From the IMG/VR virus record IMGVR_UViG_3300032214_000715, positions 1 through 64,000 of that record: DNA of 64,000 nt; one strand, given 5' to 3'. Below are positions 4,063-49,037 of this stretch, one piece after another (within the stretch, counting starts at the first letter, position 1; every line of letters starts with the position of its first letter). The notes beneath the pieces are model-generated. The model saw only the letters and a program-made list of their open reading frames with translations, was not told the origin of the DNA and made no database searches. Position numbers and translations under genes: made by a program.

Positions 4063-4284
4063 ATGGTCATCCGATCACCAGAACACGAAGTTATTTTTGG
4101 TAAGAAAAATCATCAGAGACAAATTGACTGGTGTACTGAAAAGTTTGGCAAACGATGGAGTGTAATAGATAATCGTGAAGGGACTTGGACCTGCTTTTGG
4201 GCAGGTGTAGATTCTCCTAGAAACTATCGTTGGTTATTTAAAGACGAAAAAGATTTGGTAATGTTTGTATTGAGGTGGATGTGA
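4063..4284 (+). CDS. Small hypothetical, FxLRW family
   Basis: WCTEKFG...FKDEKDLVMFVLRWM. Confidence 0.7.
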   Translation: MVIRSPEHEVIFGKKNHQRQIDWCTEKFGKRWSVIDNREGTWTCFWAGVDSPRNYRWLFKDEKDLVMFVLRWM

Positions 4285-41062: not shown

Positions 41063-41257
41063 TCAATCATCCCTACAATTACAATCACCAGTGCCGAAAC
41101 GAAGTTCTCCGCAATATGGACAACCTATACGATAATGTGGATCTAACTCGTTGAGAACACGATAGTATTCTGTTGTGCCAACAGGGCCGCCGCAATCCAT
41201 AGCAATTGCTACATGTGAGTAGCCTTTACTCAACAGTTCCTTAATTCGTTCGTTCAT
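41063..41257 (-). CDS. Chimeric ORF: MNERIKEL N-terminus plus Zn-finger
   Basis: MNERIKELL then CPYC...CNC. Confidence 0.65.
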   Translation of the reverse strand: MNERIKELLSKGYSHVAIAMDCGGPVGTTEYYRVLNELDPHYRIGCPYCGELRFGTGDCNCRDD

Positions 41258-41430
41258 AATGTTAGACCGCCCTTCTTTTCAAGACTTGCTTGATGCTCTT
41301 GTGGACTACGATTTACACACAACCCACCATCGTAAAGCAGGGGTTGTCCACACCAAGCTAACCATTCTAACCCACTCGGAGTAAATTTAGTTCCTGTGAC
41401 ATTCCAAGCCCGCCTGAATTGTTCGTTCAT
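41254..41430 (-). CDS. 58-aa ORF starting MNEQ (below ORF-track cutoff)
   Basis: Own translation MNEQFRRAWNV...KGGLTL; ATGA overlaps both ends. Confidence 0.55.
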   Translation of the reverse strand: MNEQFRRAWNVTGTKFTPSGLEWLAWCGQPLLYDGGLCVNRSPQEHQASLEKKGGLTL

Positions 41431-41750
41431 ACCATACTCCTTCCAATCTCAGCCGCAGCCCTGACGATGGCGCGGCGTGTGGCGGCATATCCATCTTCGC
41501 CGCACTTTTCCCAGTCCTCTCTTGAGTAGCGCAGGGTGTAGAAGGGTAGGCATTTCACCGCCAGCCTGAAAGCATCGCCGTCGTCGGTGAGGGGGTTCCA
41601 AAGCGTTGGGTAGTCACTTGTTCTAGTCGGATGCCTTGACCTAAGATAGAACTCGAAAGCCGAAGGGAACAAAGGAAATCGTTTTTCAATGAAATCGTAC
41701 TTAGCCGCCTTCGCAGCGTATTCCAGCAGTTCTCTATCTGTATCAATCAT
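41427..41750 (-). CDS. Hypothetical protein, higher GC
   Basis: WNPLTDDGDAFRLAV; ends RAAAEIGRSMV. Confidence 0.65.
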   Translation of the reverse strand: MIDTDRELLEYAAKAAKYDFIEKRFPLFPSAFEFYLRSRHPTRTSDYPTLWNPLTDDGDAFRLAVKCLPFYTLRYSREDWEKCGEDGYAATRRAIVRAAAEIGRSMV

Positions 41751-42321: not shown

Positions 42322-42545
42322 TATTTTACTCCAAAATGTTCCCGAATCGCACCTTCTGCAATTCGCAATCCATCTTCCCATTCATCTTTAGAATTCATAG
42401 ATTCGTTTTGAATTGCTTGAATACATTCCTGAATAATTAGTTCAGCAAACATTTTATGATCGACCAAACGCTGGCTGTCACCACGATACCAGTAATCATG
42501 GACTTCTGAAGCCTGCTCTAATAGTTCTTGGAGTCTTTCGTTCAT
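42321..42545 (-). CDS. MNERIKE-family paralog
   Basis: MNERLQELL, MFAELIIQEC, HFGVK. Confidence 0.8.
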   Translation of the reverse strand: MNERLQELLEQASEVHDYWYRGDSQRLVDHKMFAELIIQECIQAIQNESMNSKDEWEDGLRIAEGAIREHFGVK

Positions 42546-42790
42546 AGTCCCAGTACCTTTCGTTCTTGCTCAGTAAGTTTAGCAAGGGCACGTTTACGGA
42601 GTTCACCGTTTTTGTATTCTTCCAGTTCTGTCAGATCATCCAAGATAACAATCTCTCGCTCGTAGATTTCGTCAAACTTGTTTTTGGCTTTCCAAGCATC
42701 CGCAGCTTCCTTAGTTGCCACATAGTACAGATGGTTGTGACGTTCGCCGCCGTCCCACACTTGAATGTCCCAGCATTTGATGATTTTCAT
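42542..42790 (-). CDS. Hypothetical protein
   Basis: MKIIKCWDIQ; ends ALAKLTEQERKVLGL. Confidence 0.6.
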   Translation of the reverse strand: MKIIKCWDIQVWDGGERHNHLYYVATKEAADAWKAKNKFDEIYEREIVILDDLTELEEYKNGELRKRALAKLTEQERKVLGL

Positions 42791-43044
42791 TCCGAAACTC
42801 CGAAACGCCACTTGATCATTTGACTGAATGTTAGTTGAGCATTAGTCCAAATCTTACCCTCATTATCGGTCTTTGCCTTTGTTAGATTAACCACGAGGTC
42901 TTTTTCAACAATATCAATACATTCCCTAACAATCAACTCGGCGAACTTTCTTTGTGCTTTAGTAAGGCCAGTGGGATCAAATCCGTTATATTCTGCTGAA
43001 ATGATTCCAGCCTCAACAGCAAGTTCTTTAATTCGTTCGTTCAT
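42787..43044 (-). CDS. MNERIKE-family paralog
   Basis: MNERIKELA, KFAELIVREC, RFGVSE. Confidence 0.8.
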   Translation of the reverse strand: MNERIKELAVEAGIISAEYNGFDPTGLTKAQRKFAELIVRECIDIVEKDLVVNLTKAKTDNEGKIWTNAQLTFSQMIKWRFGVSE

Positions 43045-43049
43045 CGTCT

Positions 43050-43105
43050 GCTCCTGATTTCTAACTTAGTGAATATAGTATAACAGGAAACGAAATTATT
43101 GTCAA
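43050..43105 (-). promoter_or_regulatory. Early promoter/RBS cassette copy 1
   Basis: TTGACA-17-TATACT...GGAG; 50/56 identical to 48230-48285. Confidence 0.85.
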
Positions 43106-43112
43106 GTGCTGG

Positions 43113-43583
43113 TCATTTATTACCCTGGGATACGCTACTAGCAGAACTAGAACTACTTGAACCAGAACCTGACGAAACCAATTGTAGTAGTCTAGCAGTT
43201 CCACTAGCATCGCTTTGTTGAAAGATTGCGACAAGTTTTGATTGTAGTGTTTGACCAGTATTGTCACGCCAACTGACAACCACTTGAATGTTCTTGTGTT
43301 GAGCGTTTGGTTGTGACACTGTATATCTTACACTATAAGTAGCAGATTTTCCCAGTGTGTCGGGCAAAGTTTTTTCACCTACTCCAAGTTCTGGGTCAGT
43401 CCAAGACCGTGTTCGTAGATTTTCAATAACACCTTGAGCAATGAATCCTGCTTCAGATTGTTGTTTAGCCGCTGAACTTGCGGTAAATTGAATACCCTGT
43501 AGTCTAGTCAGAGCCAACAGCCCGCCGCCGATTATGATCGTTGCGATCATAATATCAATTAGTCCTACTCCACGCTGATTCAT
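43113..43583 (-). CDS. Type IV pilin-like protein (PilV-like minor pilin)
   Basis: MNQRG/VGLIDIMIATIIIGGGLLAL prepilin class III signal; A...A...IENLR helix. Confidence 0.75.
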   Translation of the reverse strand: MNQRGVGLIDIMIATIIIGGGLLALTRLQGIQFTASSAAKQQSEAGFIAQGVIENLRTRSWTDPELGVGEKTLPDTLGKSATYSVRYTVSQPNAQHKNIQVVVSWRDNTGQTLQSKLVAIFQQSDASGTARLLQLVSSGSGSSSSSSASSVSQGNK

Positions 43584-43777
43584 TCTGAAACTCCGAAATG
43601 TTTTTTAGCAGCATTCCAACCATAGCAGAAGGCTTCCCATTCTGCTTCGTCATACCCTAGTGCTTCATGGTTTCTGGGCCTATCTCTGAGGTCTGCGGTT
43701 TCTTTAACATATTCTTCGAACATGTCTACTTGTTCTTTAGTATCCCATTCCCAACCTGGTTCGCCGTATCCCATCAC
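43580..43777 (-). CDS. Chimeric ORF with family C-terminus only
   Basis: Unrelated N-terminus, ends KKHFGVSE. Confidence 0.65.
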   Translation of the reverse strand: MMGYGEPGWEWDTKEQVDMFEEYVKETADLRDRPRNHEALGYDEAEWEAFCYGWNAAKKHFGVSE

Positions 43778-44019
43778 TTGACTCCGAAATGTTCTTTAAT
43801 CAATTGCGCCGTTTCCCATAGTGGGTCTGCTTCATGATATGAATATTCTTTGCGATTGACAATAGCCAAACATTCCCTAATAATCAAGTTAGCGAATCGT
43901 TGGGCACTGGCTTCACCTTGCCAATATACGGTAGGAGGATTACCATCAAGTGCAGGATCACCATCGTAGTGGCGAGTTCCGTGGGCTTGGCGATATAGTT
44001 CTTTCAATCTTTCGTTCAT
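43774..44019 (-). CDS. MNERIKE-family paralog
   Basis: MNERLKELY, RFANLIIREC, IKEHFGVK. Confidence 0.8.
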   Translation of the reverse strand: MNERLKELYRQAHGTRHYDGDPALDGNPPTVYWQGEASAQRFANLIIRECLAIVNRKEYSYHEADPLWETAQLIKEHFGVK

Positions 44020-44396
44020 ACTGTCTCCAATTCATCAATTTTTTCGTATGCGACAACCGCTGGTAGTAGTAAAATTGCGGCTGGGTCTTCACTTAGAACT
44101 GCCCATACTCGCAATTTATCACTAGACATATCTAGGTATTTGGCAGCATCATCATATGCGATTAGTGCTAGGATCGCATCCCGAGCCGCATTCCAAACCG
44201 CAGCCCTCGCCGCAGCCCGCCCCGTCAGCGCCAGAGCCGCATCCCAAGCCGCAATCCGAGCCGCATCATAAGCCGCATCATAAGCCGCATCATAAGCCGC
44301 ATCCCAAGCCGCATCCCAAACTTCGGGATGTGATTTTGAAGACTCCAACACGCGATCAATATGTGTCGCATTTGGCAAATGACTCCAGGCGTTCAT
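44016..44396 (-). CDS. Ala-rich protein with (W/Y)DAA tandem repeats
   Basis: 12-bp tandem units GCGGCTT(GG/AT)GAT, about 44236-44318. Confidence 0.7.
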   Translation of the reverse strand: MNAWSHLPNATHIDRVLESSKSHPEVWDAAWDAAYDAAYDAAYDAARIAAWDAALALTGRAAARAAVWNAARDAILALIAYDDAAKYLDMSSDKLRVWAVLSEDPAAILLLPAVVAYEKIDELETV

Positions 44397-44632
44397 TTTA
44401 CAAACCTACCGTCCTCTTCAATGTAAATATCAAAATGTGATTCAATATTGCTGGCAATAGCAAGTCCTGGTCCAGACAGTTTAGGTTTGTCATACTCGTA
44501 TGCGATATTGATACATTCCCTGATCAACAACTCGGCGAACTTTAGTTGAATGCGTTCATAGTAATCTGCACAGTCGGAATCAACTATTTCGTCCTGCGCC
44601 TGTTCGTAAAGTTTTATAATTCGTTCGTTCAT
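44393..44632 (-). CDS. MNERIKE-family paralog
   Basis: MNERIIKLY, KFAELLIREC; ends GRFVK. Confidence 0.78.
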   Translation of the reverse strand: MNERIIKLYEQAQDEIVDSDCADYYERIQLKFAELLIRECINIAYEYDKPKLSGPGLAIASNIESHFDIYIEEDGRFVK

Positions 44633-44645
44633 TATCAACTTTCTG

Positions 44646-44978
44646 TTAAGTATTCTCAGTTTGGCACTGCCCGTCTGGACCATAGGTACAAGCATAGACA
44701 GCAGAACTATCAGTTAGTGGCTGCTCAAAGATACGGTAGAAACAATATTGCTCCCCTTCTGTGTCAAAGAAGAACATACTACCATTGACCAACCCTGCCA
44801 TGATATTATAGAACTCATCAGTCTCACCGTAAAGGGCTTTGACTTCTGCCATGATAAACTTCCAAATTTCGTCATCTTCGGGTTTATCGTACTCTAACCC
44901 ATTGCCTACATAAACAGCAGGTTTACCCATTTGCTTCACAGCAAGACTTTGAATTTCATTCCATTGACAAACTTTCAT
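44646..44978 (-). CDS. Hypothetical protein
   Basis: Starts in ATGA overlap after FGVEE. Confidence 0.6.
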   Translation of the reverse strand: MKVCQWNEIQSLAVKQMGKPAVYVGNGLEYDKPEDDEIWKFIMAEVKALYGETDEFYNIMAGLVNGSMFFFDTEGEQYCFYRIFEQPLTDSSAVYACTYGPDGQCQTENT

Positions 44979-45232
44979 TCCTCAACTCCGAAATGTTGTT
45001 TAATGTTATCAATACATTTTTTTACGCCCCTATTATGTGCGTTAGAATGCGTACCGACTGTACCGACAAAATTAACATTACATTGCTCAACACATTCTGC
45101 CACAATGAGTTCGGCGAACTTTTTTCGGTCAAATACTGTCCGGATAGTGCTCAATCCACCAGCATTCATATCAAAGTCGCAAGGCACCTTTACCCAACAT
45201 TGGGATTCAAGTTCTTTAATTCGTTCGTTCAT
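44975..45232 (-). CDS. MNERIKE-family paralog
   Basis: MNERIKELE, KFAELIVAEC, IKQHFGVEE. Confidence 0.8.
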   Translation of the reverse strand: MNERIKELESQCWVKVPCDFDMNAGGLSTIRTVFDRKKFAELIVAECVEQCNVNFVGTVGTHSNAHNRGVKKCIDNIKQHFGVEE

Positions 45233-45468
45233 ACCATACCCTTTCCAATCTCTGCTGCGCGGATGTGCCAGGCGCACCATGAGGCTCCGACGCCGCGTTC
45301 GAGTCCAGAGTTCCGATGAGCGATCTTGTCGCACTCCTTCGCGCACTGCTCCCGCTCATCAGCCCGGACAAGGGCGGCGAAGCGTTCAAGTTGCCTGTCG
45401 AAATAGACGTCGGTGTGTTTTGCGGAAAACCCAGCCTGCTTGGCAAGTTGTCGAATTTGTTCGTTCAT
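45229..45468 (-). CDS. MNEQ-start paralog, higher GC
   Basis: FAALVRADEREQCA; ends RAAEIGKGMV like 41427. Confidence 0.72.
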   Translation of the reverse strand: MNEQIRQLAKQAGFSAKHTDVYFDRQLERFAALVRADEREQCAKECDKIAHRNSGLERGVGASWCAWHIRAAEIGKGMV

Positions 45469-45698
45469 TCCGAAACTCCGAAATGTCTGGCAATATGCTC
45501 TGCGGCGGTTAATTTGGTTTGGGGGTGTGGATAATTTACTGTGACTGCCATACATTCACTGATCAACAACTCGGCAAACTTTTCAAATTCTGAATACGAA
45601 ACAAACCGAGCCATTCCTCTCGGATCGCCATCTAATATAGCCATTCTACCGAAACGTATATTAGCCTGTTCGGCAAGTAGTTTAATTCGTTCGTTCAT
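45465..45698 (-). CDS. MNERIKE-family paralog
   Basis: MNERIKLLA, KFAELLISEC, HFGVSE. Confidence 0.8.
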   Translation of the reverse strand: MNERIKLLAEQANIRFGRMAILDGDPRGMARFVSYSEFEKFAELLISECMAVTVNYPHPQTKLTAAEHIARHFGVSE

Positions 45699-45719
45699 TC
45701 TTTAACTCCGAGATGTTGT

Positions 45720-45959
45720 TTAATCAATCCCCACTTGACGAGTACAGCCTTTGCCACATTGTTCTTGCCAACTGGTAGAACCTTGACAGTTGGTAAAGTA
45801 GCGAATGATGCCACCGTCACTGAATCGATAGACAGTACAGCCTTCGTGAGTAAACAGTTTATCCACTACAAACTCTTTGCCTACAGCAGTGCTGGTTTCA
45901 GCAGGCTTGCTACAGCCCGCCAACAGGGTGATAGCGAGGATAGTCAATACAGTTTTCAT
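45720..45959 (-). CDS. Small lipoprotein
   Basis: MKTVLTILAITLLAGC lipobox. Confidence 0.75.
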   Translation of the reverse strand: MKTVLTILAITLLAGCSKPAETSTAVGKEFVVDKLFTHEGCTVYRFSDGGIIRYFTNCQGSTSWQEQCGKGCTRQVGID

Positions 45960-46207
45960 TCTTCAACTCCAAAATGTGTTTTGATCATTGTAGCACAACT
46001 ATCAGCCGTTGCTTTAGTTTTGCGAGCCATTTCACCTGTGTTGGTGATTGTAGCCATATTAGCAACAAACTCACACTTGCCTACGCATTCTGCCACAATC
46101 AACTCAGCGAACTTTTCAAACTGCTGACTATATGAAAAAGTACCATCTTGCTCATAATGAAGTTCAAACCCAGCCTGTTCGGCTAGTTCCTTGATTCGTT
46201 CGTTCAT
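45956..46207 (-). CDS. MNERIKE-family paralog
   Basis: MNERIKELAEQAG, KFAELIVAEC, HFGVEE. Confidence 0.8.
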   Translation of the reverse strand: MNERIKELAEQAGFELHYEQDGTFSYSQQFEKFAELIVAECVGKCEFVANMATITNTGEMARKTKATADSCATMIKTHFGVEE

Positions 46208-46359
46208 TTTACAAACCTTCCCCAAATGAATTTCAGCGATAGACCATCCATAAATGCCTGCTTGAACGGTGTTAGAGGTGCCCAAATAATGTAGCCAATT
46301 ACAAGACCTTCAAGCCAAGCAATGACAACAAAGATAGCAATGGTTAGATCACTCATCAT
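46204..46359 (-). CDS. 51-aa membrane peptide ending GRFVK (below cutoff)
   Basis: Own translation MMSDLTIAIFVVIAW...FIWGRFVK; ATGA overlaps. Confidence 0.5.
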   Translation of the reverse strand: MMSDLTIAIFVVIAWLEGLVIGYIIWAPLTPFKQAFMDGLSLKFIWGRFVK

Positions 46360-46601
46360 TCAACCTCGAACAACAGATGCTCACCTTGACTACGGATGCG
46401 AACAACCTTACGACCTTCGATTCGATAACCAATACCAATAAAAGGTCCACCGCTGGGGTCAACAAACCCTAGATTGTCGTAGTCAATACGCTCTTGACCT
46501 TCTTGACCACCATAACGCCAGTATTGTAGATCACCGATAATGGTGTAAGTGTTGTCACTAATCTTTACGAATTGGTATTCAACACCATTACGATTACGCA
46601 T
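46356..46601 (-). CDS. Hypothetical protein
   Basis: MRNRNGVEYQF; FVDPSGGPFI. Confidence 0.6.
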   Translation of the reverse strand: MRNRNGVEYQFVKISDNTYTIIGDLQYWRYGGQEGQERIDYDNLGFVDPSGGPFIGIGYRIEGRKVVRIRSQGEHLLFEVE

Positions 46602-46842
46602 TTTCAACTCCAAATCTTTCTTGAATTTTCGTAACACAGTCTCTACGGAATGCGTCTTCAATTTGATTCCTGTAATCAATGTAACCAGGAGGCAAGTTTT
46701 CTACAATGTGTGTACATTCACGTACAACGTATTTCGCGAATTTCACTAATTCTGCATTAGTGAAGGTCCAACTTTGTAGCGTAGGTTGATCCTTCAACAC
46801 CTCTAACGCAAGGTCAAAAATAATGTCGTTTTCCTTGTCCAT
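46594..46842 (-). CDS. Divergent MNERIKE-family paralog
   Basis: KFAKYVVREC, RFGVENA. Confidence 0.7.
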   Translation of the reverse strand: MDKENDIIFDLALEVLKDQPTLQSWTFTNAELVKFAKYVVRECTHIVENLPPGYIDYRNQIEDAFRRDCVTKIQERFGVENA

Positions 46843-47213
46843 TATACTTCCTTCATTTCATCAACGTGCTTACACTTGTGCCTAAACTGGTAGCCGGGAC
46901 AAGAACAGGACCAACCCTTGCCAAACTTGCTAAGAAAATACTTCTTACCGTTACTACCTGACACTTCGATAACTTGACCTACAGGCTTTTCTACAGACTT
47001 AGGAAAATATACTTCGTCACTCTCACCCTTCTTGGGGAGGACAACAAACTTGCGACCTTTAGAGTCAAAGTTCATGGGCTTGCTGAACTTGATCAGTGCC
47101 TTAGTACCAGTCTTGATATAACCTACCATCTTACGCTTGTCGTCAGTAAGGTAGTAAACGTGATTAGGGACGTAGCTAGCGTCCCATTCTGTGACTTCTT
47201 GAAAGTATTTCAT
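46842..47213 (-). CDS. SWIM zinc-finger protein
   Basis: WSCSCPGYQFRHKCKH. Confidence 0.75.
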   Translation of the reverse strand: MKYFQEVTEWDASYVPNHVYYLTDDKRKMVGYIKTGTKALIKFSKPMNFDSKGRKFVVLPKKGESDEVYFPKSVEKPVGQVIEVSGSNGKKYFLSKFGKGWSCSCPGYQFRHKCKHVDEMKEV

Positions 47214-47214
47214 C

Positions 47215-47628
47215 TCACGCAGCCTTCTTAAAGTAGTCGAAGGGCAGACCGTTCTTGTAGCAGAGGAACTCATCATCCCCGTCCGTGCCGTCTGCCTCGT
47301 GAATCCAACGCAGTGCGGTCTCGCGAGTCTTTGCCCCCAATGCGATCATCTCTCCAATCCGTGCTTCGAAGTCCACAGCCGCAGCCTTCTCATTCTCACG
47401 GCGCCGTGCCTCCTCGCGCTCAATCACAGTGCCCAAGTAGGTGATCTCACGCTGGAAATCCTCTGCGGTGAAGTGTGACACCTCCTGCCCGCGTGGACGG
47501 AAACCAAACGCATCCTTGTAGGCATCCCACCAGATGGTGTGAAGCTGCTCAACATCGCTCATCTGCTCCCAAGAAGGGAACTCTTCGGTTTGAGTGGCCA
47601 GGGCTTGGGACAGTGTGACTTGAGACAT
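47215..47628 (-). CDS. Early hypothetical protein, higher GC
   Basis: WDAYKDAFGFRPR; promoter cassette upstream. Confidence 0.7.
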   Translation of the reverse strand: MSQVTLSQALATQTEEFPSWEQMSDVEQLHTIWWDAYKDAFGFRPRGQEVSHFTAEDFQREITYLGTVIEREEARRRENEKAAAVDFEARIGEMIALGAKTRETALRWIHEADGTDGDDEFLCYKNGLPFDYFKKAA

Positions 47629-48229: not shown

Positions 48230-48285
48230 GCTCCTGTTTTCTAACTCAGTGAATGCAGTATATCAGGAAACGAATTTATTGTCAA
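48230..48285 (-). promoter_or_regulatory. Early promoter/RBS cassette copy 3
   Basis: TTGACA-17-TATACT...GGAG. Confidence 0.85.
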
Positions 48286-49037
48286 ACTATTTGTAACTCT
48301 TTTGATAAGTCTGGAATATCAAAAATCCATTGTTCAAGCATGTATTCGCTATAGTAGTCAAATGGCATGTAAAAGTAGCCCGCATCGCCCCAGTTTTTCC
48401 CAAAACTGTTCTCAACGATAAACACTTTTTTGGAACTGTCGTATCCAACTAATAACACCGCGTGACCTTCTGATGATCCTACATCTTCGGTTATTATTGA
48501 ACGCTCTTCGGTCAAATCGTAAAATGATTCAAAAACTTCAATGCCAGAAACAACAGGATAATAATTATTTATGGCATCTATTGCGTCCGCGATACTGACC
48601 AATCGTTCATATTTAGTAATTTGTCTATGTTTTGCCTCAGCGTATGCTTCATCGCTTGGTTTAGCAAACAAATTGTTTAATGTATATGGCCAAATAGATT
48701 CTTTACACACTCCGTATGTTTTTAAGCCACGCAGACCACTTTTGATGCTGGCCCCACTGTCCCAAGTTACAGTGTCTTCGTATATTCGTGCGTTGTAATA
48801 TACAAACATTCTACTAAGTTCGGTATAGTGTTCTGGATATAAACGTTGAGTCATTAATTCATACGCACTCACCAACGCATTTCCGGTACAACTGCCAACT
48901 TGTTGTTGATTCTCAATCAACATTCCCCATTGACGCAAATCAATCGCATCGGCGGATTGTTTTCCAGAATTAGAATATATGTAATTGTTAATATCCGGAT
49001 CGCTGCTCTTGTATCTTGAAGTTTTTAAAATATTCAT
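48282..49037 (-). CDS. Papain-like cysteine protease (C1A)
   Basis: NQQQVGSCTG (Cys), GHAVLLVGY (His), ENSFG..WG..GY (Asn). Confidence 0.92.
   Translation of the reverse strand: MNILKTSRYKSSDPDINNYIYSNSGKQSADAIDLRQWGMLIENQQQVGSCTGNALVSAYELMTQRLYPEHYTELSRMFVYYNARIYEDTVTWDSGASIKSGLRGLKTYGVCKESIWPYTLNNLFAKPSDEAYAEAKHRQITKYERLVSIADAIDAINNYYPVVSGIEVFESFYDLTEERSIITEDVGSSEGHAVLLVGYDSSKKVFIVENSFGKNWGDAGYFYMPFDYYSEYMLEQWIFDIPDLSKELQIV

What the first reader, a model, noticed from the sequence alone, without database searches (positions are those of the whole stretch)
45695..45725. Out-of-frame fossil of the cassette C-terminus after the lipoprotein gene
Seen: the lipoprotein ends GAT TAA, but the overlapping frame reads ATT AAA CAA CAT CTC GGA GTT AAA GAA TGA (IKQHLGVKE-stop) and runs into the next ATGAACGAA. 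The family C-terminal motif is therefore kept as non-coding DNA. Inference: the lipoprotein replaced the body of a former paralog while the junction was kept for its SD. This is the best internal evidence that the DNA junction, not the peptide, is the selected unit.
Basis: seen in the sequence. Interest (0 to 1): 0.6.

Follow-up and report, generated by a model that had tools for sequence, protein, structure and literature searches.

The report
Gene-tail scar bounding a mobile phage cassette
The short untranslated copy of a gene-family tail after the lipoprotein gene is real, and it marks the right-hand edge of a 267-base lipoprotein cassette that sits at a different gene junction in related uncultured freshwater phages.

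Summary
After the lipoprotein stop (minus strand, 45720-45722), the +1 frame reads IKQHLGVKE-stop and overlaps the next ATG. This 30-nt stretch is 27/30 identical to real ends of the MNERIKEL...HFGVEE paralog family. Outside the ribosome-binding site (SD) and ATGA it matches 19/22, against 7-10/22 for unrelated GGAG-N7-ATGA sites in the genome.

It is not the end of another gene. The lipoprotein ends at its native ...GID-stop, as in relatives that lack the motif. The overlapping frame has no family similarity upstream.

The main new result concerns the block 45970..45704, which runs from one GGAGTT SD through the lipoprotein and the scar to the next GGAGTT. It is 100% identical in two other metagenome contigs, where it lies between different neighbours. 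One of those genomes is only 91% identical elsewhere. So the scar travels with the lipoprotein as the 3' edge of an SD-to-SD cassette, exchanged by recombination in the conserved junctions.

A lake contig from another study lacks 975 nt (four genes), with both breakpoints inside ATGAACGAACGAAT. Across 260 diverged homologues, codon choice in the junction is almost fixed (GGA 96% against 24% in gene bodies; CGA 93% against 16%).

The parts
45695..45724 (-). Out-of-frame fossil of the family C-terminus (IKQHLGVKE-stop). Its first 5 nt overlap the lipoprotein's last codon and stop; its TGA overlaps the next ATG.
   Evidence: It is 27/30 identical to real family ends and 19/22 outside SD and ATGA. 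The HMM aligns only the last 11 residues of this frame.
45706..45709 (-). GGAG Shine-Dalgarno inside the fossil, 7 nt before the ATG of gene 45465..45698.
   Evidence: In translated family copies this GGAG is the Gly (GGA) codon plus the first base of the Val codon (GGA in 96% of copies).
45720..45959 (-). Small lipoprotein gene (79 aa, DUF4884-like). It is the cargo of the cassette. Its ATG overlaps the TGA of the upstream family gene.
   Evidence: Its native end ...GID-stop is shared with homologues L009 and L010, which have no fossil.
45704..45970 (-). 267-nt SD-to-SD cassette: GGAGTT + spacer + lipoprotein + TAA + 10 fossil bases + GGAGTT. It is 100% identical in L184 and L185, where it lies between different genes.
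   Evidence: The flanks are unrelated immediately outside the block. Background identity to L184 is 91.1% over 821 nt, which gives P about 1.6e-11 for 267 identical bases.
45956..46207 (-). Family paralog A (83 aa, MNERIKELAEQAG...IKTHFGVEE), the upstream neighbour. Its last 11 nt before the overlap belong to the shared cassette block.
45465..45698 (-). Family paralog B (77 aa), the downstream neighbour, translated from the SD inside the fossil.
   Evidence: Its orthologues L023 (66%) and L024 (53%) have other upstream neighbours.
45219..46193 (-). 975-nt segment (paralog A, lipoprotein with fossil, B, and gene 45229..45468) that is absent from a related phage contig in an independent lake metagenome. 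Both breakpoints lie inside the identical ATGAACGAACGAAT.
   Evidence: table 8. X2 record 13 (2587 nt) runs from 47300..46194 straight on to 45218..45049.
43580..43777 (-). 65-aa gene that carries only the family C-terminal motif, in frame (KKHFGVSE). In L184 and L185 its orthologue is the gene directly upstream of the lipoprotein cassette, and its last residues change to ...VEE with the cassette.
41063..41257 (-). 64-aa gene that carries only the family N-terminal motif (MNERIKEL) on an unrelated Cys-rich body. It is the mirror-image chimera.

Best explanation
The window is the first 64 kb of a 239-kb uncultured freshwater phage record. The region 39-47 kb is an array of small genes. It is dominated by one paralog family (about 80 aa, MNERIKELAEQAG...KFAELIV.EC...HFGVEE) whose stop overlaps the next start (GAATGA).

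The roughly 55 nt around each stop/start are conserved as DNA, not only as peptide. They act as homology patches where cassettes are swapped, lost and gained by general homologous recombination.

The fossil at 45695..45724 is the last 9 codons of such a family gene. It was fused, possibly at the shared ATTAA microhomology, to the native stop of a foreign lipoprotein gene. It is no longer translated as a family tail.

The fossil now forms the right-hand edge of a 267-nt unit that runs from one GGAGTT SD to the next (45970..45704). This unit has moved between different junctions of related phages. The right crossover falls inside the fossil, between its CTC and the base after GGAGTT.

In its present place the fossil also supplies the SD, the spacing and the ATGA for the downstream gene.

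Shown: the fossil, its non-coding status, the identical cassette in two contexts, the 975-nt junction-bounded indel, and the codon-level conservation. Inferred: the recombination mechanism (homologous, possibly through a circular intermediate), the origin by microhomology, and the use of the SD.
For: - Fossil identity.
- Native lipoprotein end. Homologues L009 and L010 end ...GID-stop with unrelated DNA behind. L010 and L012-L017 sit in family arrays without a fossil.
- Cassette mobility. L184 (JGI sample 3300002161) and L185 (ENA ERZ27247435) carry the identical 267 nt between the orthologue of 43580..43777 and an 88-aa family gene. The flanks diverge at once outside GGAGTT. Elsewhere the window is 91.1% (L184) or 98.4% (L185) identical to them.
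- Junction-bounded indel in X2, an independent study.
- General pattern. 36.5% of internal ends of >=95%-identity matches between IMG/VR loci lie within 30 nt of a junction ATG, against 5.6% at random.
- Similar out-of-frame fossils after non-family ORFs occur in L023 and L138, the latter with the same GATTAA-ACAACAT layout.
- DNA-level constraint in 260 homologues whose bodies are <=50% identical: GGA 96% vs 24%, GTT 88% vs 42%, AAC 89% vs 33%, CGA 93% vs 16%, CTT 77% vs 14%.
- Relaxed peptide constraint in the fossil. It has Leu (CTC) where 357 of 365 translated copies have Phe, and none has CTC.
- A RecA/UvsX-like gene is present, and no integrase was found in the 239 kb held.
Against: - Only two contexts of the fossil-bearing cassette were found. 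Scans of the viral and metagenome collections for its boundary found no third.
- The direction of movement and the original slot cannot be told.
- No 'empty site' (A directly followed by B) was found.
- L185 is 98.4% identical to the window elsewhere, so against it 267 identical bases are only mildly unusual (P about 0.013).
- Many short-sided joints are unreliable. Only one long contig (X2 record 13) supports the 975-nt indel.
- There are no RNA or ribosome data, so use of the SD and non-translation of the fossil frame are inferred.
- The strong codon conservation downstream of the ATG could reflect an RNA-level function rather than recombination.
Confidence: 0.8

Rival explanations
1. In-situ replacement. 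A family paralog once stood between A and B in this genome. The lipoprotein replaced its body there, and the tail was kept by selection because it holds the SD of gene B.
For: The fossil is a family tail and holds a well-spaced GGAG. If the cassette was exchanged by a double crossover, a former cassette in this slot would have been replaced. The window's slot could be the original one.
Against: The same fusion, with the same CTC signature, occurs in another slot. No relative has an intact paralog here. Eight other family genes that follow non-family genes in this genome have no fossil. The identity of the non-SD part reflects recent transfer, not selection.
Confidence: 0.15
2. The motif is the true C-terminus of a translated protein. 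This could be the overlapping 41-codon GTG ORF 45695..45820 or a frameshift extension of the lipoprotein.
For: The +1 frame is open for 56 codons (45698..45865) and contains a GTG.
Against: There is no ATG and no SD before the GTG. The HMM aligns only the last 11 residues, with E 2.5. The same frame is equally open in homologues L009 and L010, which lack the motif, so the openness is a property of the lipoprotein's composition. The lipoprotein stop is at its native position. There is no slippery site at GAT TAA A. The Phe is replaced by Leu.
Confidence: 0.03
3. The junction, including the fossil, is conserved because it is an RNA- or DNA-level regulatory element shared by the whole array. Examples would be an operator for a translational repressor, a processing site, or a promoter for a phage polymerase. 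Recombination at junctions would then be only a by-product.
For: Codon choice is almost fixed for about 12 codons after the ATG (AAC, CGA, CTT, CAG, GCT). This is further than an SD or a stop/start overlap explains. GGA is kept in 19 of 20 family ends that have no downstream gene nearby.
Against: No sigma-70 promoter or terminator lies at the junctions. There is no RNA structure beyond shuffles (z -0.5 to -1.3). The N-terminal part is missing from the lipoprotein's own start, and the fossil lacks nothing needed for recombination. There are no expression data.
Confidence: 0.2
4. Chance resemblance, or convergence on a good ribosome-binding site.
For: GGAG, the A-rich spacer and ATGA are what any overlapped start would need.
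Against: The fossil matches 19/22 outside GGAG and ATGA, against 7-10/22 for the nine unrelated GGAG-N7-ATGA sites. BLAST gives E about 2e-6 within the genome.
Confidence: 0.01

Closest known systems
PeSL (promoter-early stem-loop) cassettes of T4-type phages (Arbiol et al. 2010, PMC2839356; Comeau et al. 2014, PMC4122927)
   Same: Both are short repeated sequences at the boundaries of small, mostly unknown genes in a hyperplastic region. Both end in an SD and the start codon of the next gene. In both, recombination between copies gives the insertions, deletions and replacements that distinguish close relatives. PeSL-flanked genes can move as units, proposed to go through mini-circles.
   Different: PeSLs are intergenic and consist of a sigma-70 promoter plus a terminator stem-loop. 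Here the repeat is coding: the last ~10 codons of one family member, an overlapping stop/start, and the first ~12 codons of the next. It has no promoter or stem-loop. The phages are uncultured freshwater phages, and the family is absent from cultured phage records.
Conserved boundary sequences and relaxed homologous recombination in mosaic phage genomes (lambdoid phages and mycobacteriophages; from my own knowledge, not re-read here)
   Same: Mosaic joints fall at gene boundaries, and short homologies at boundaries are used for exchange.
   Different: In those phages the joints are mostly unique and often come from illegitimate recombination. Here one junction sequence is repeated at least 16 times per genome and is kept at the codon level across hundreds of homologues.
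Orphan 3' gene fragments left by displacement of modules in T6SS effector-immunity arrays of Vibrio cholerae (Kirchberger et al. 2017, PMC5361080; abstract and section titles read)
   Same: Incoming modules displace resident genes by homologous recombination in conserved flanks, without specific integration sites.
   Different: That system is bacterial and chromosomal, with kilobase-scale modules. It has no stop/start junction repeat and no role for an SD. I read only the abstract and section titles of that paper, so the comparison to 3' fragments is from my own recollection.
Integron gene cassettes
   Same: Both are arrays of small promoterless cassettes bounded by a repeated site.
   Different: There is no attC hairpin and no tyrosine integrase in the 239 kb held. 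The crossover position is only bounded to a 7-nt interval, which general recombination explains equally well.

Membership tests
PeSL regulatory cassette (T4-type phages) | Sigma-70-like early promoter inside the repeat | tested here: not met
   no promoter-like site at any junction in 42500-47500. The overall count (11) is no higher than in shuffles (8.4 +/- 2.2).
PeSL regulatory cassette (T4-type phages) | Stable stem-loop or terminator in the repeat | tested here: not met
   four junctions fold no better than shuffles (z -0.51, 0.08, -0.24, -1.34); no terminator at the junctions.
PeSL regulatory cassette (T4-type phages) | Repeat ends in the SD and start codon of the downstream gene, and lies among small variable genes | tested here: met
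PeSL regulatory cassette (T4-type phages) | Recombination between copies produces the indels and replacements seen between close relatives | tested here: met
   975-nt indel; cassette in two slots; breakpoint enrichment.
PeSL regulatory cassette (T4-type phages) | Circular cassette intermediates (mini-circles) | not testable with these tools
   This needs PCR or long reads from infected cells.
Integron cassette / attC | Imperfect inverted repeat (attC hairpin) at the cassette end | tested here: not met
Integron cassette / attC | Adjacent tyrosine recombinase (IntI) | tested here: not met
   no PF00589 match in the 239 kb. The record is only 68% complete, so absence is not proven.
MNERIKEL...HFGVEE phage paralog family (unnamed; no Pfam or PHROG) | Full-length match: N-terminal MNERI, central KFAELIV.EC, C-terminal HFGVEE | tested here: not met
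   For the fossil frame, one search shows that only HMM positions 69-79 align (E 2.5). It is a fragment, not a member gene. Sixteen full members are present in the genome.
DUF4884-type small phage lipoprotein (the cargo gene) | Signal peptide with lipobox Cys, and a DUF4884 match | tested here: inconclusive
   The lipobox LLAGC is seen in the sequence. The Pfam DUF4884 match has E 5.6e-6 but 26.4 bits, below the 30-bit cut-off. The precomputed listing gives PF16225. Homologues in Pseudomonas phages Dolphis and Jeremy are annotated DUF4884.
Programmed +1 frameshift site (prfB type) | Shift-prone codon before an in-frame stop, with the product conserved in the new frame | tested here: not met
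   GAT TAA A is not a known shift site. Relatives end at the same stop without the motif.

The most novel reading that the evidence does not exclude
The ~55-nt stop/start junction may not be just a passive homology patch. It could be a dedicated exchange site that makes these arrays an integron-like cassette system built from translation-initiation regions. In that reading, any gene flanked by two GGAGTT...ATGA junctions, such as this lipoprotein with its fossil, becomes mobile between co-infecting phages and is expressed wherever it lands. The near-fixed codons on both sides would be maintained by that function, or by a shared RNA-level regulator.
Probability: 0.15. Interest if true: 0.8.

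Novelty: new variant of a known kind. Interest (0 to 1): 0.55.

Why it matters
Hyperplastic regions full of small unknown genes are where phage genomes change fastest. How genes enter and leave them is understood mainly for T4-type phages, through PeSLs.

This system reaches a similar result by another route. The repeat is a coding stop/start junction of a very large, uncharacterised gene family of uncultured freshwater phages. A foreign gene that has picked up a 25-nt family tail behaves as a cassette that can be placed at, and probably expressed from, any junction.

The fossil alone is a small scar. Together with the second slot, the 975-nt indel and the codon statistics, it gives a concrete and testable case of exchange of SD-to-SD units. 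It also shows how a candidate accessory gene (a small lipoprotein of a type also found in T1-like and Pseudomonas phages) spreads.

Tried and rejected
1. My own idea that the lipoprotein's ...ID-stop derives from a family ...CIDNIKQ tail through a 5-nt deletion. Rejected, because homologues without any fossil also end ...GID-stop.
2. An overlapping 41-aa ORF or a frameshift fusion. Rejected.
3. PeSL-like promoter or terminator, or an RNA structure at the junction. None found.
4. Relatives in cultured phages. DNA search found none. The paralog family gave one weak hit. Only the lipoprotein has cultured relatives.
5. Pfam and PHROG for the paralog family. No match. The protein atlas gives only viral 'hypothetical protein' clusters.
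6. Scans for the lipoprotein-fossil boundary. The viral-contig scan hit only a true family member. The metagenome scan hit only the L184 contig again.
7. Exact look-ups of A, B, the 51-aa membrane gene and D, to find an empty site or other contexts. Only the window's own record and a Logan assembly of a probably related sample came back.
8. Many joints between junction copies have sides of only 20-31 nt. I left them out as unreliable.
9. The two large protein searches, structure prediction and complex prediction were not used, because no claim here rests on them.

Full report
**Setting**

The window is the first 64 kb of a 239,163-bp IMG/VR virus record. CheckV rates the record 68% complete, and its GC content is 39%. 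Related DNA occurs in lake, freshwater and lagoon metagenomes.

Between about 39 and 47 kb the genes run on the minus strand and are small. An HMM built from the window's own copies finds 16 full-length members of one paralog family in the genome. Thirteen lie at 39-47 kb and three at 85-86 kb.

Members are about 65-95 aa long. They begin MNERIKELAEQAG, carry KFAELIV.EC in the middle and end HFGVEE. The stop TGA overlaps the next ATG (GAATGA), and the Gly-Val codons spell GGAGTT, a Shine-Dalgarno (SD) site seven bases before that ATG.

The family has no Pfam or PHROG match and is essentially absent from cultured phage records. It is very common in uncultured viral contigs, with more than 480 confirmed hits for one member. 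The protein atlas knows it only as viral 'hypothetical protein' clusters.

**The observation**

The lipoprotein gene is 45720..45959 (79 aa, lipobox LLAGC). It has a weak DUF4884 match and relatives in Pseudomonas phages Dolphis and Jeremy and in T1-like coliphages.

The gene ends GAT TAA. One base out of frame, 45724..45695 reads IKQHLGVKE-stop, and the TGA overlaps the ATG of family gene B (45465..45698).

- The stretch is 27/30 identical to the real ends at 44975 and 40489.
- A genome-wide BLAST finds these matches at E 2e-6 and 1.5e-5.
- Of the 18 GGAG-N7-ATGA sites in the genome, eight family ends and the fossil score 15-19 of 22 at the positions outside GGAG and ATGA. The nine unrelated sites score 7-10.

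The resemblance therefore goes well beyond what a ribosome-binding site needs.

**Is it the end of another gene?**

The fossil frame is open for 56 codons and contains a GTG. Several results argue against translation in this frame.

- No SD precedes the GTG.
- The family HMM aligns only the last 11 residues (E 2.5).
- The same frame is just as open in the lipoprotein homologues L009 and L010, which have no motif behind them. The openness is a property of this gene's composition.
- The homologues end at the same place...QMGID-stop in L009 and ...QQGID-stop in L010, each followed by unrelated DNA. The lipoprotein stop is therefore native.
- The fossil shares only ATTAA with the lipoprotein's end, which is a possible microhomology joint.
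- In 365 distinct translated family copies the residue before the Gly is Phe in 357 (TTC 230, TTT 127). The fossil has CTC (Leu), which none of them has. This fits a tail that is no longer read as protein.

**What the fossil belongs to**

An exact look-up of the lipoprotein found it on two further contigs. These are L184 (JGI sample 3300002161, 2.1 kb, found again as L190) and L185 (ENA ERZ27247435, 1.1 kb).

On these contigs the gene lies in a different slot.
- Upstream is the orthologue of the window's 65-aa gene 43580..43777.
- Downstream is an 88-aa family member that begins MKQRIEEL.

The alignment shows a block of 267 nt that is 100% identical to the window (45970..45704). The block runs from GGAGTT through GAAGA, the ATG, the lipoprotein, TAA and ACAACATCTC to the next GGAGTT. 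Immediately outside the block on both sides the sequences are unrelated.

Elsewhere the window and L184 are 91.1% identical over 821 nt and 85-87% in two other blocks. L185 is 98.4% identical over 441 nt. At 91.1% identity, 267 identical bases have a probability of about 1.6e-11. At 98.4% the figure is 0.013.

The fossil, with its CTC signature, therefore travels with the lipoprotein as the 3' edge of an SD-to-SD cassette that was exchanged recently between diverged genomes. In at least one lineage the right crossover lies between the CTC and the A/G base after GGAGTT, which is inside the fossil.

The last two codons of the upstream gene also change with the cassette. The 65-aa gene ends ...VSE in the window and ...VEE in L184. 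The spacer after GGAGTT therefore belongs to the downstream unit.

**Independent support from reads**

In a lake-water metagenome of another study (X2), a 2587-nt contig follows the window from 47300 to 46194 at about 95% identity. It then continues directly at 45218..45049 (table 8).

This contig lacks 975 nt: paralog A, the lipoprotein with its fossil, B, and gene 45229..45468. Both breakpoints lie inside the identical ATGAACGAACGAAT.

Other contigs cover the lipoprotein-fossil junction directly.
- X2 covers 45694-45928 with one mismatch and then diverges exactly where L184 does.
- X3 covers 45713-45843 with no mismatch.

The junction is therefore real in several samples. Many further joints between junction copies were reported, but with sides of only 20-31 nt, and I do not use them.

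**Is this general?**

Three analyses of the IMG/VR loci fetched bear on this.

1. Of 353 distinct sites matching the motif core, 298 end a full family ORF and about 40 sit in frame on partial or non-family bodies. A second pass kept ten sites with short open frames upstream.
   - Two follow non-family ORFs out of frame, as in the window. These are L023 and L138, and L138 has the same GATTAA-ACAACAT layout.
   - At least five are family genes one base out of frame with an intact motif, so that the protein ends ...TFRS-stop.
2. Of 85 distinct internal ends of >=95%-identity matches between different loci, 36.5% lie within 30 nt of a junction ATG, against 5.6% for random positions.
3. In 260 homologues whose bodies are at most about 50% identical, codon choice in the junction is almost fixed:

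| Codon | In the junction | In gene bodies |
|---|---|---|
| Gly GGA | 96% | 24% |
| Val GTT | 88% | 42% |
| Asn AAC | 89% | 33% |
| Arg CGA | 93% | 16% |
| Leu CTT | 77% | 14% |
| Gln CAG | 71% | 34% |

All of these differences have P < 1e-17. GGA is kept in 19 of 20 family ends that have no downstream gene nearby.

The junction is therefore conserved as DNA over roughly 55 nt on both sides of the stop/start. This is further than an SD and an overlap explain.

**Mechanism**

The best reading is exchange of SD-to-SD cassettes by general homologous recombination between the repeated junctions.

- The genome holds a RecA/UvsX-like gene. No tyrosine integrase, RecT or ERF was found in the 239 kb available.
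- The junctions hold no sigma-70 promoter, no terminator and no RNA structure beyond shuffles.
- The system therefore works like the PeSL cassettes of T4-type phages (PMC2839356) but fails their defining features.

Whether the cassette moved by a double crossover (replacing whatever lay between two junctions) or through a circle that integrated at one junction cannot be told here. Either route gives the observed hybrid junctions.

The fossil is a family tail, and it does carry the SD. Three parts of the interpretation do not hold as stated.

1. The fusion is older than at least one of its two known placements, so an in-situ replacement at this slot is not shown.
   - Orthologues of B have other neighbours. 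In L023 two small membrane genes precede it, and in L024 a 119-aa gene ending ...GVEE does.
   - No relative with an intact paralog at this slot was found.
2. Eight other family genes in this genome follow non-family genes without any fossil. The tail is therefore not required for expression.
3. The peptide is constrained too (Phe invariant with a varying codon). 'DNA, not peptide' should read 'DNA as well as peptide'.

**Limits**

- Only two contexts of this cassette are known.
- The direction of transfer and the origin of the fusion are unknown.
- There are no expression data.
- The strong codon conservation after the ATG remains only partly explained. It could come from gene conversion among junctions or from an RNA-level function.

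Noticed in passing
window 46204-46225 and 44393-44415 (minus strand): A second recurrent junction type: the upstream genes end ...GRFVK-stop (GG[A/T]AGGTTTGTAAA before the ATG). It occurs at the end of the 51-aa membrane gene 46204..46359 and of 44393..44632. The same ...PRFVK-stop type precedes family genes in L025, L148 and L131.
   Followed up: no
window 45229-45468 and 41427-41750 (minus strand): A second small paralog type that ends AAEIG(K/R)(G/S)MV-stop, with near-identical DNA before the next ATGAACGAAC.
   Followed up: no
L023:3686-3718: Directly after a family end, a 10-codon stub MKTLLTLIEW-stop whose first 22 nt match the lipoprotein start at 16/22. It may be a remnant of a deleted lipoprotein cassette upstream of the 66% orthologue of gene B, or it may be chance.
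   Followed up: partly
L148:1731, L155:1955, L046:3903, L051:3983, L053:3983: Family genes whose body is one base (an extra A) out of frame with an otherwise intact junction motif, so that the protein ends ...TFRS-stop at the TGA inside GTTGAA. These could be real mutations or homopolymer errors in the assemblies.
   Followed up: partly
window 44016-44396 (minus strand): A 126-aa protein made largely of (W/Y)DAA(Y/W)DAA repeats. The repeat region differs in length in L184.
   Followed up: no
window 43113-43583 (minus strand): A 156-aa protein with a type IV pilin-like N-terminus (MNQRGVGLIDIMIATIIIGG...) and a Ser-rich tail. It occupies the slot that holds the lipoprotein cassette in L184 and L185.
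   Followed up: no
window 48282-49037 (minus strand): A papain-like cysteine peptidase (Peptidase_C1) gene just upstream of the small-gene array.
   Followed up: no
L181 (IMGVR_UViG_3300044673_000278), reverse strand 4170-4205: A family member that ends ...HFGV-stop because the first Glu codon is TAA (GGAGTTTAAGAATGA). The rest of the junction DNA and the next ATG are unchanged.
   Followed up: no
G000 225351-226106 (outside the window): A RecA/UvsX-like recombinase gene (54 bits). No tyrosine integrase, RecT or ERF was found in the 239 kb held.
   Followed up: partly
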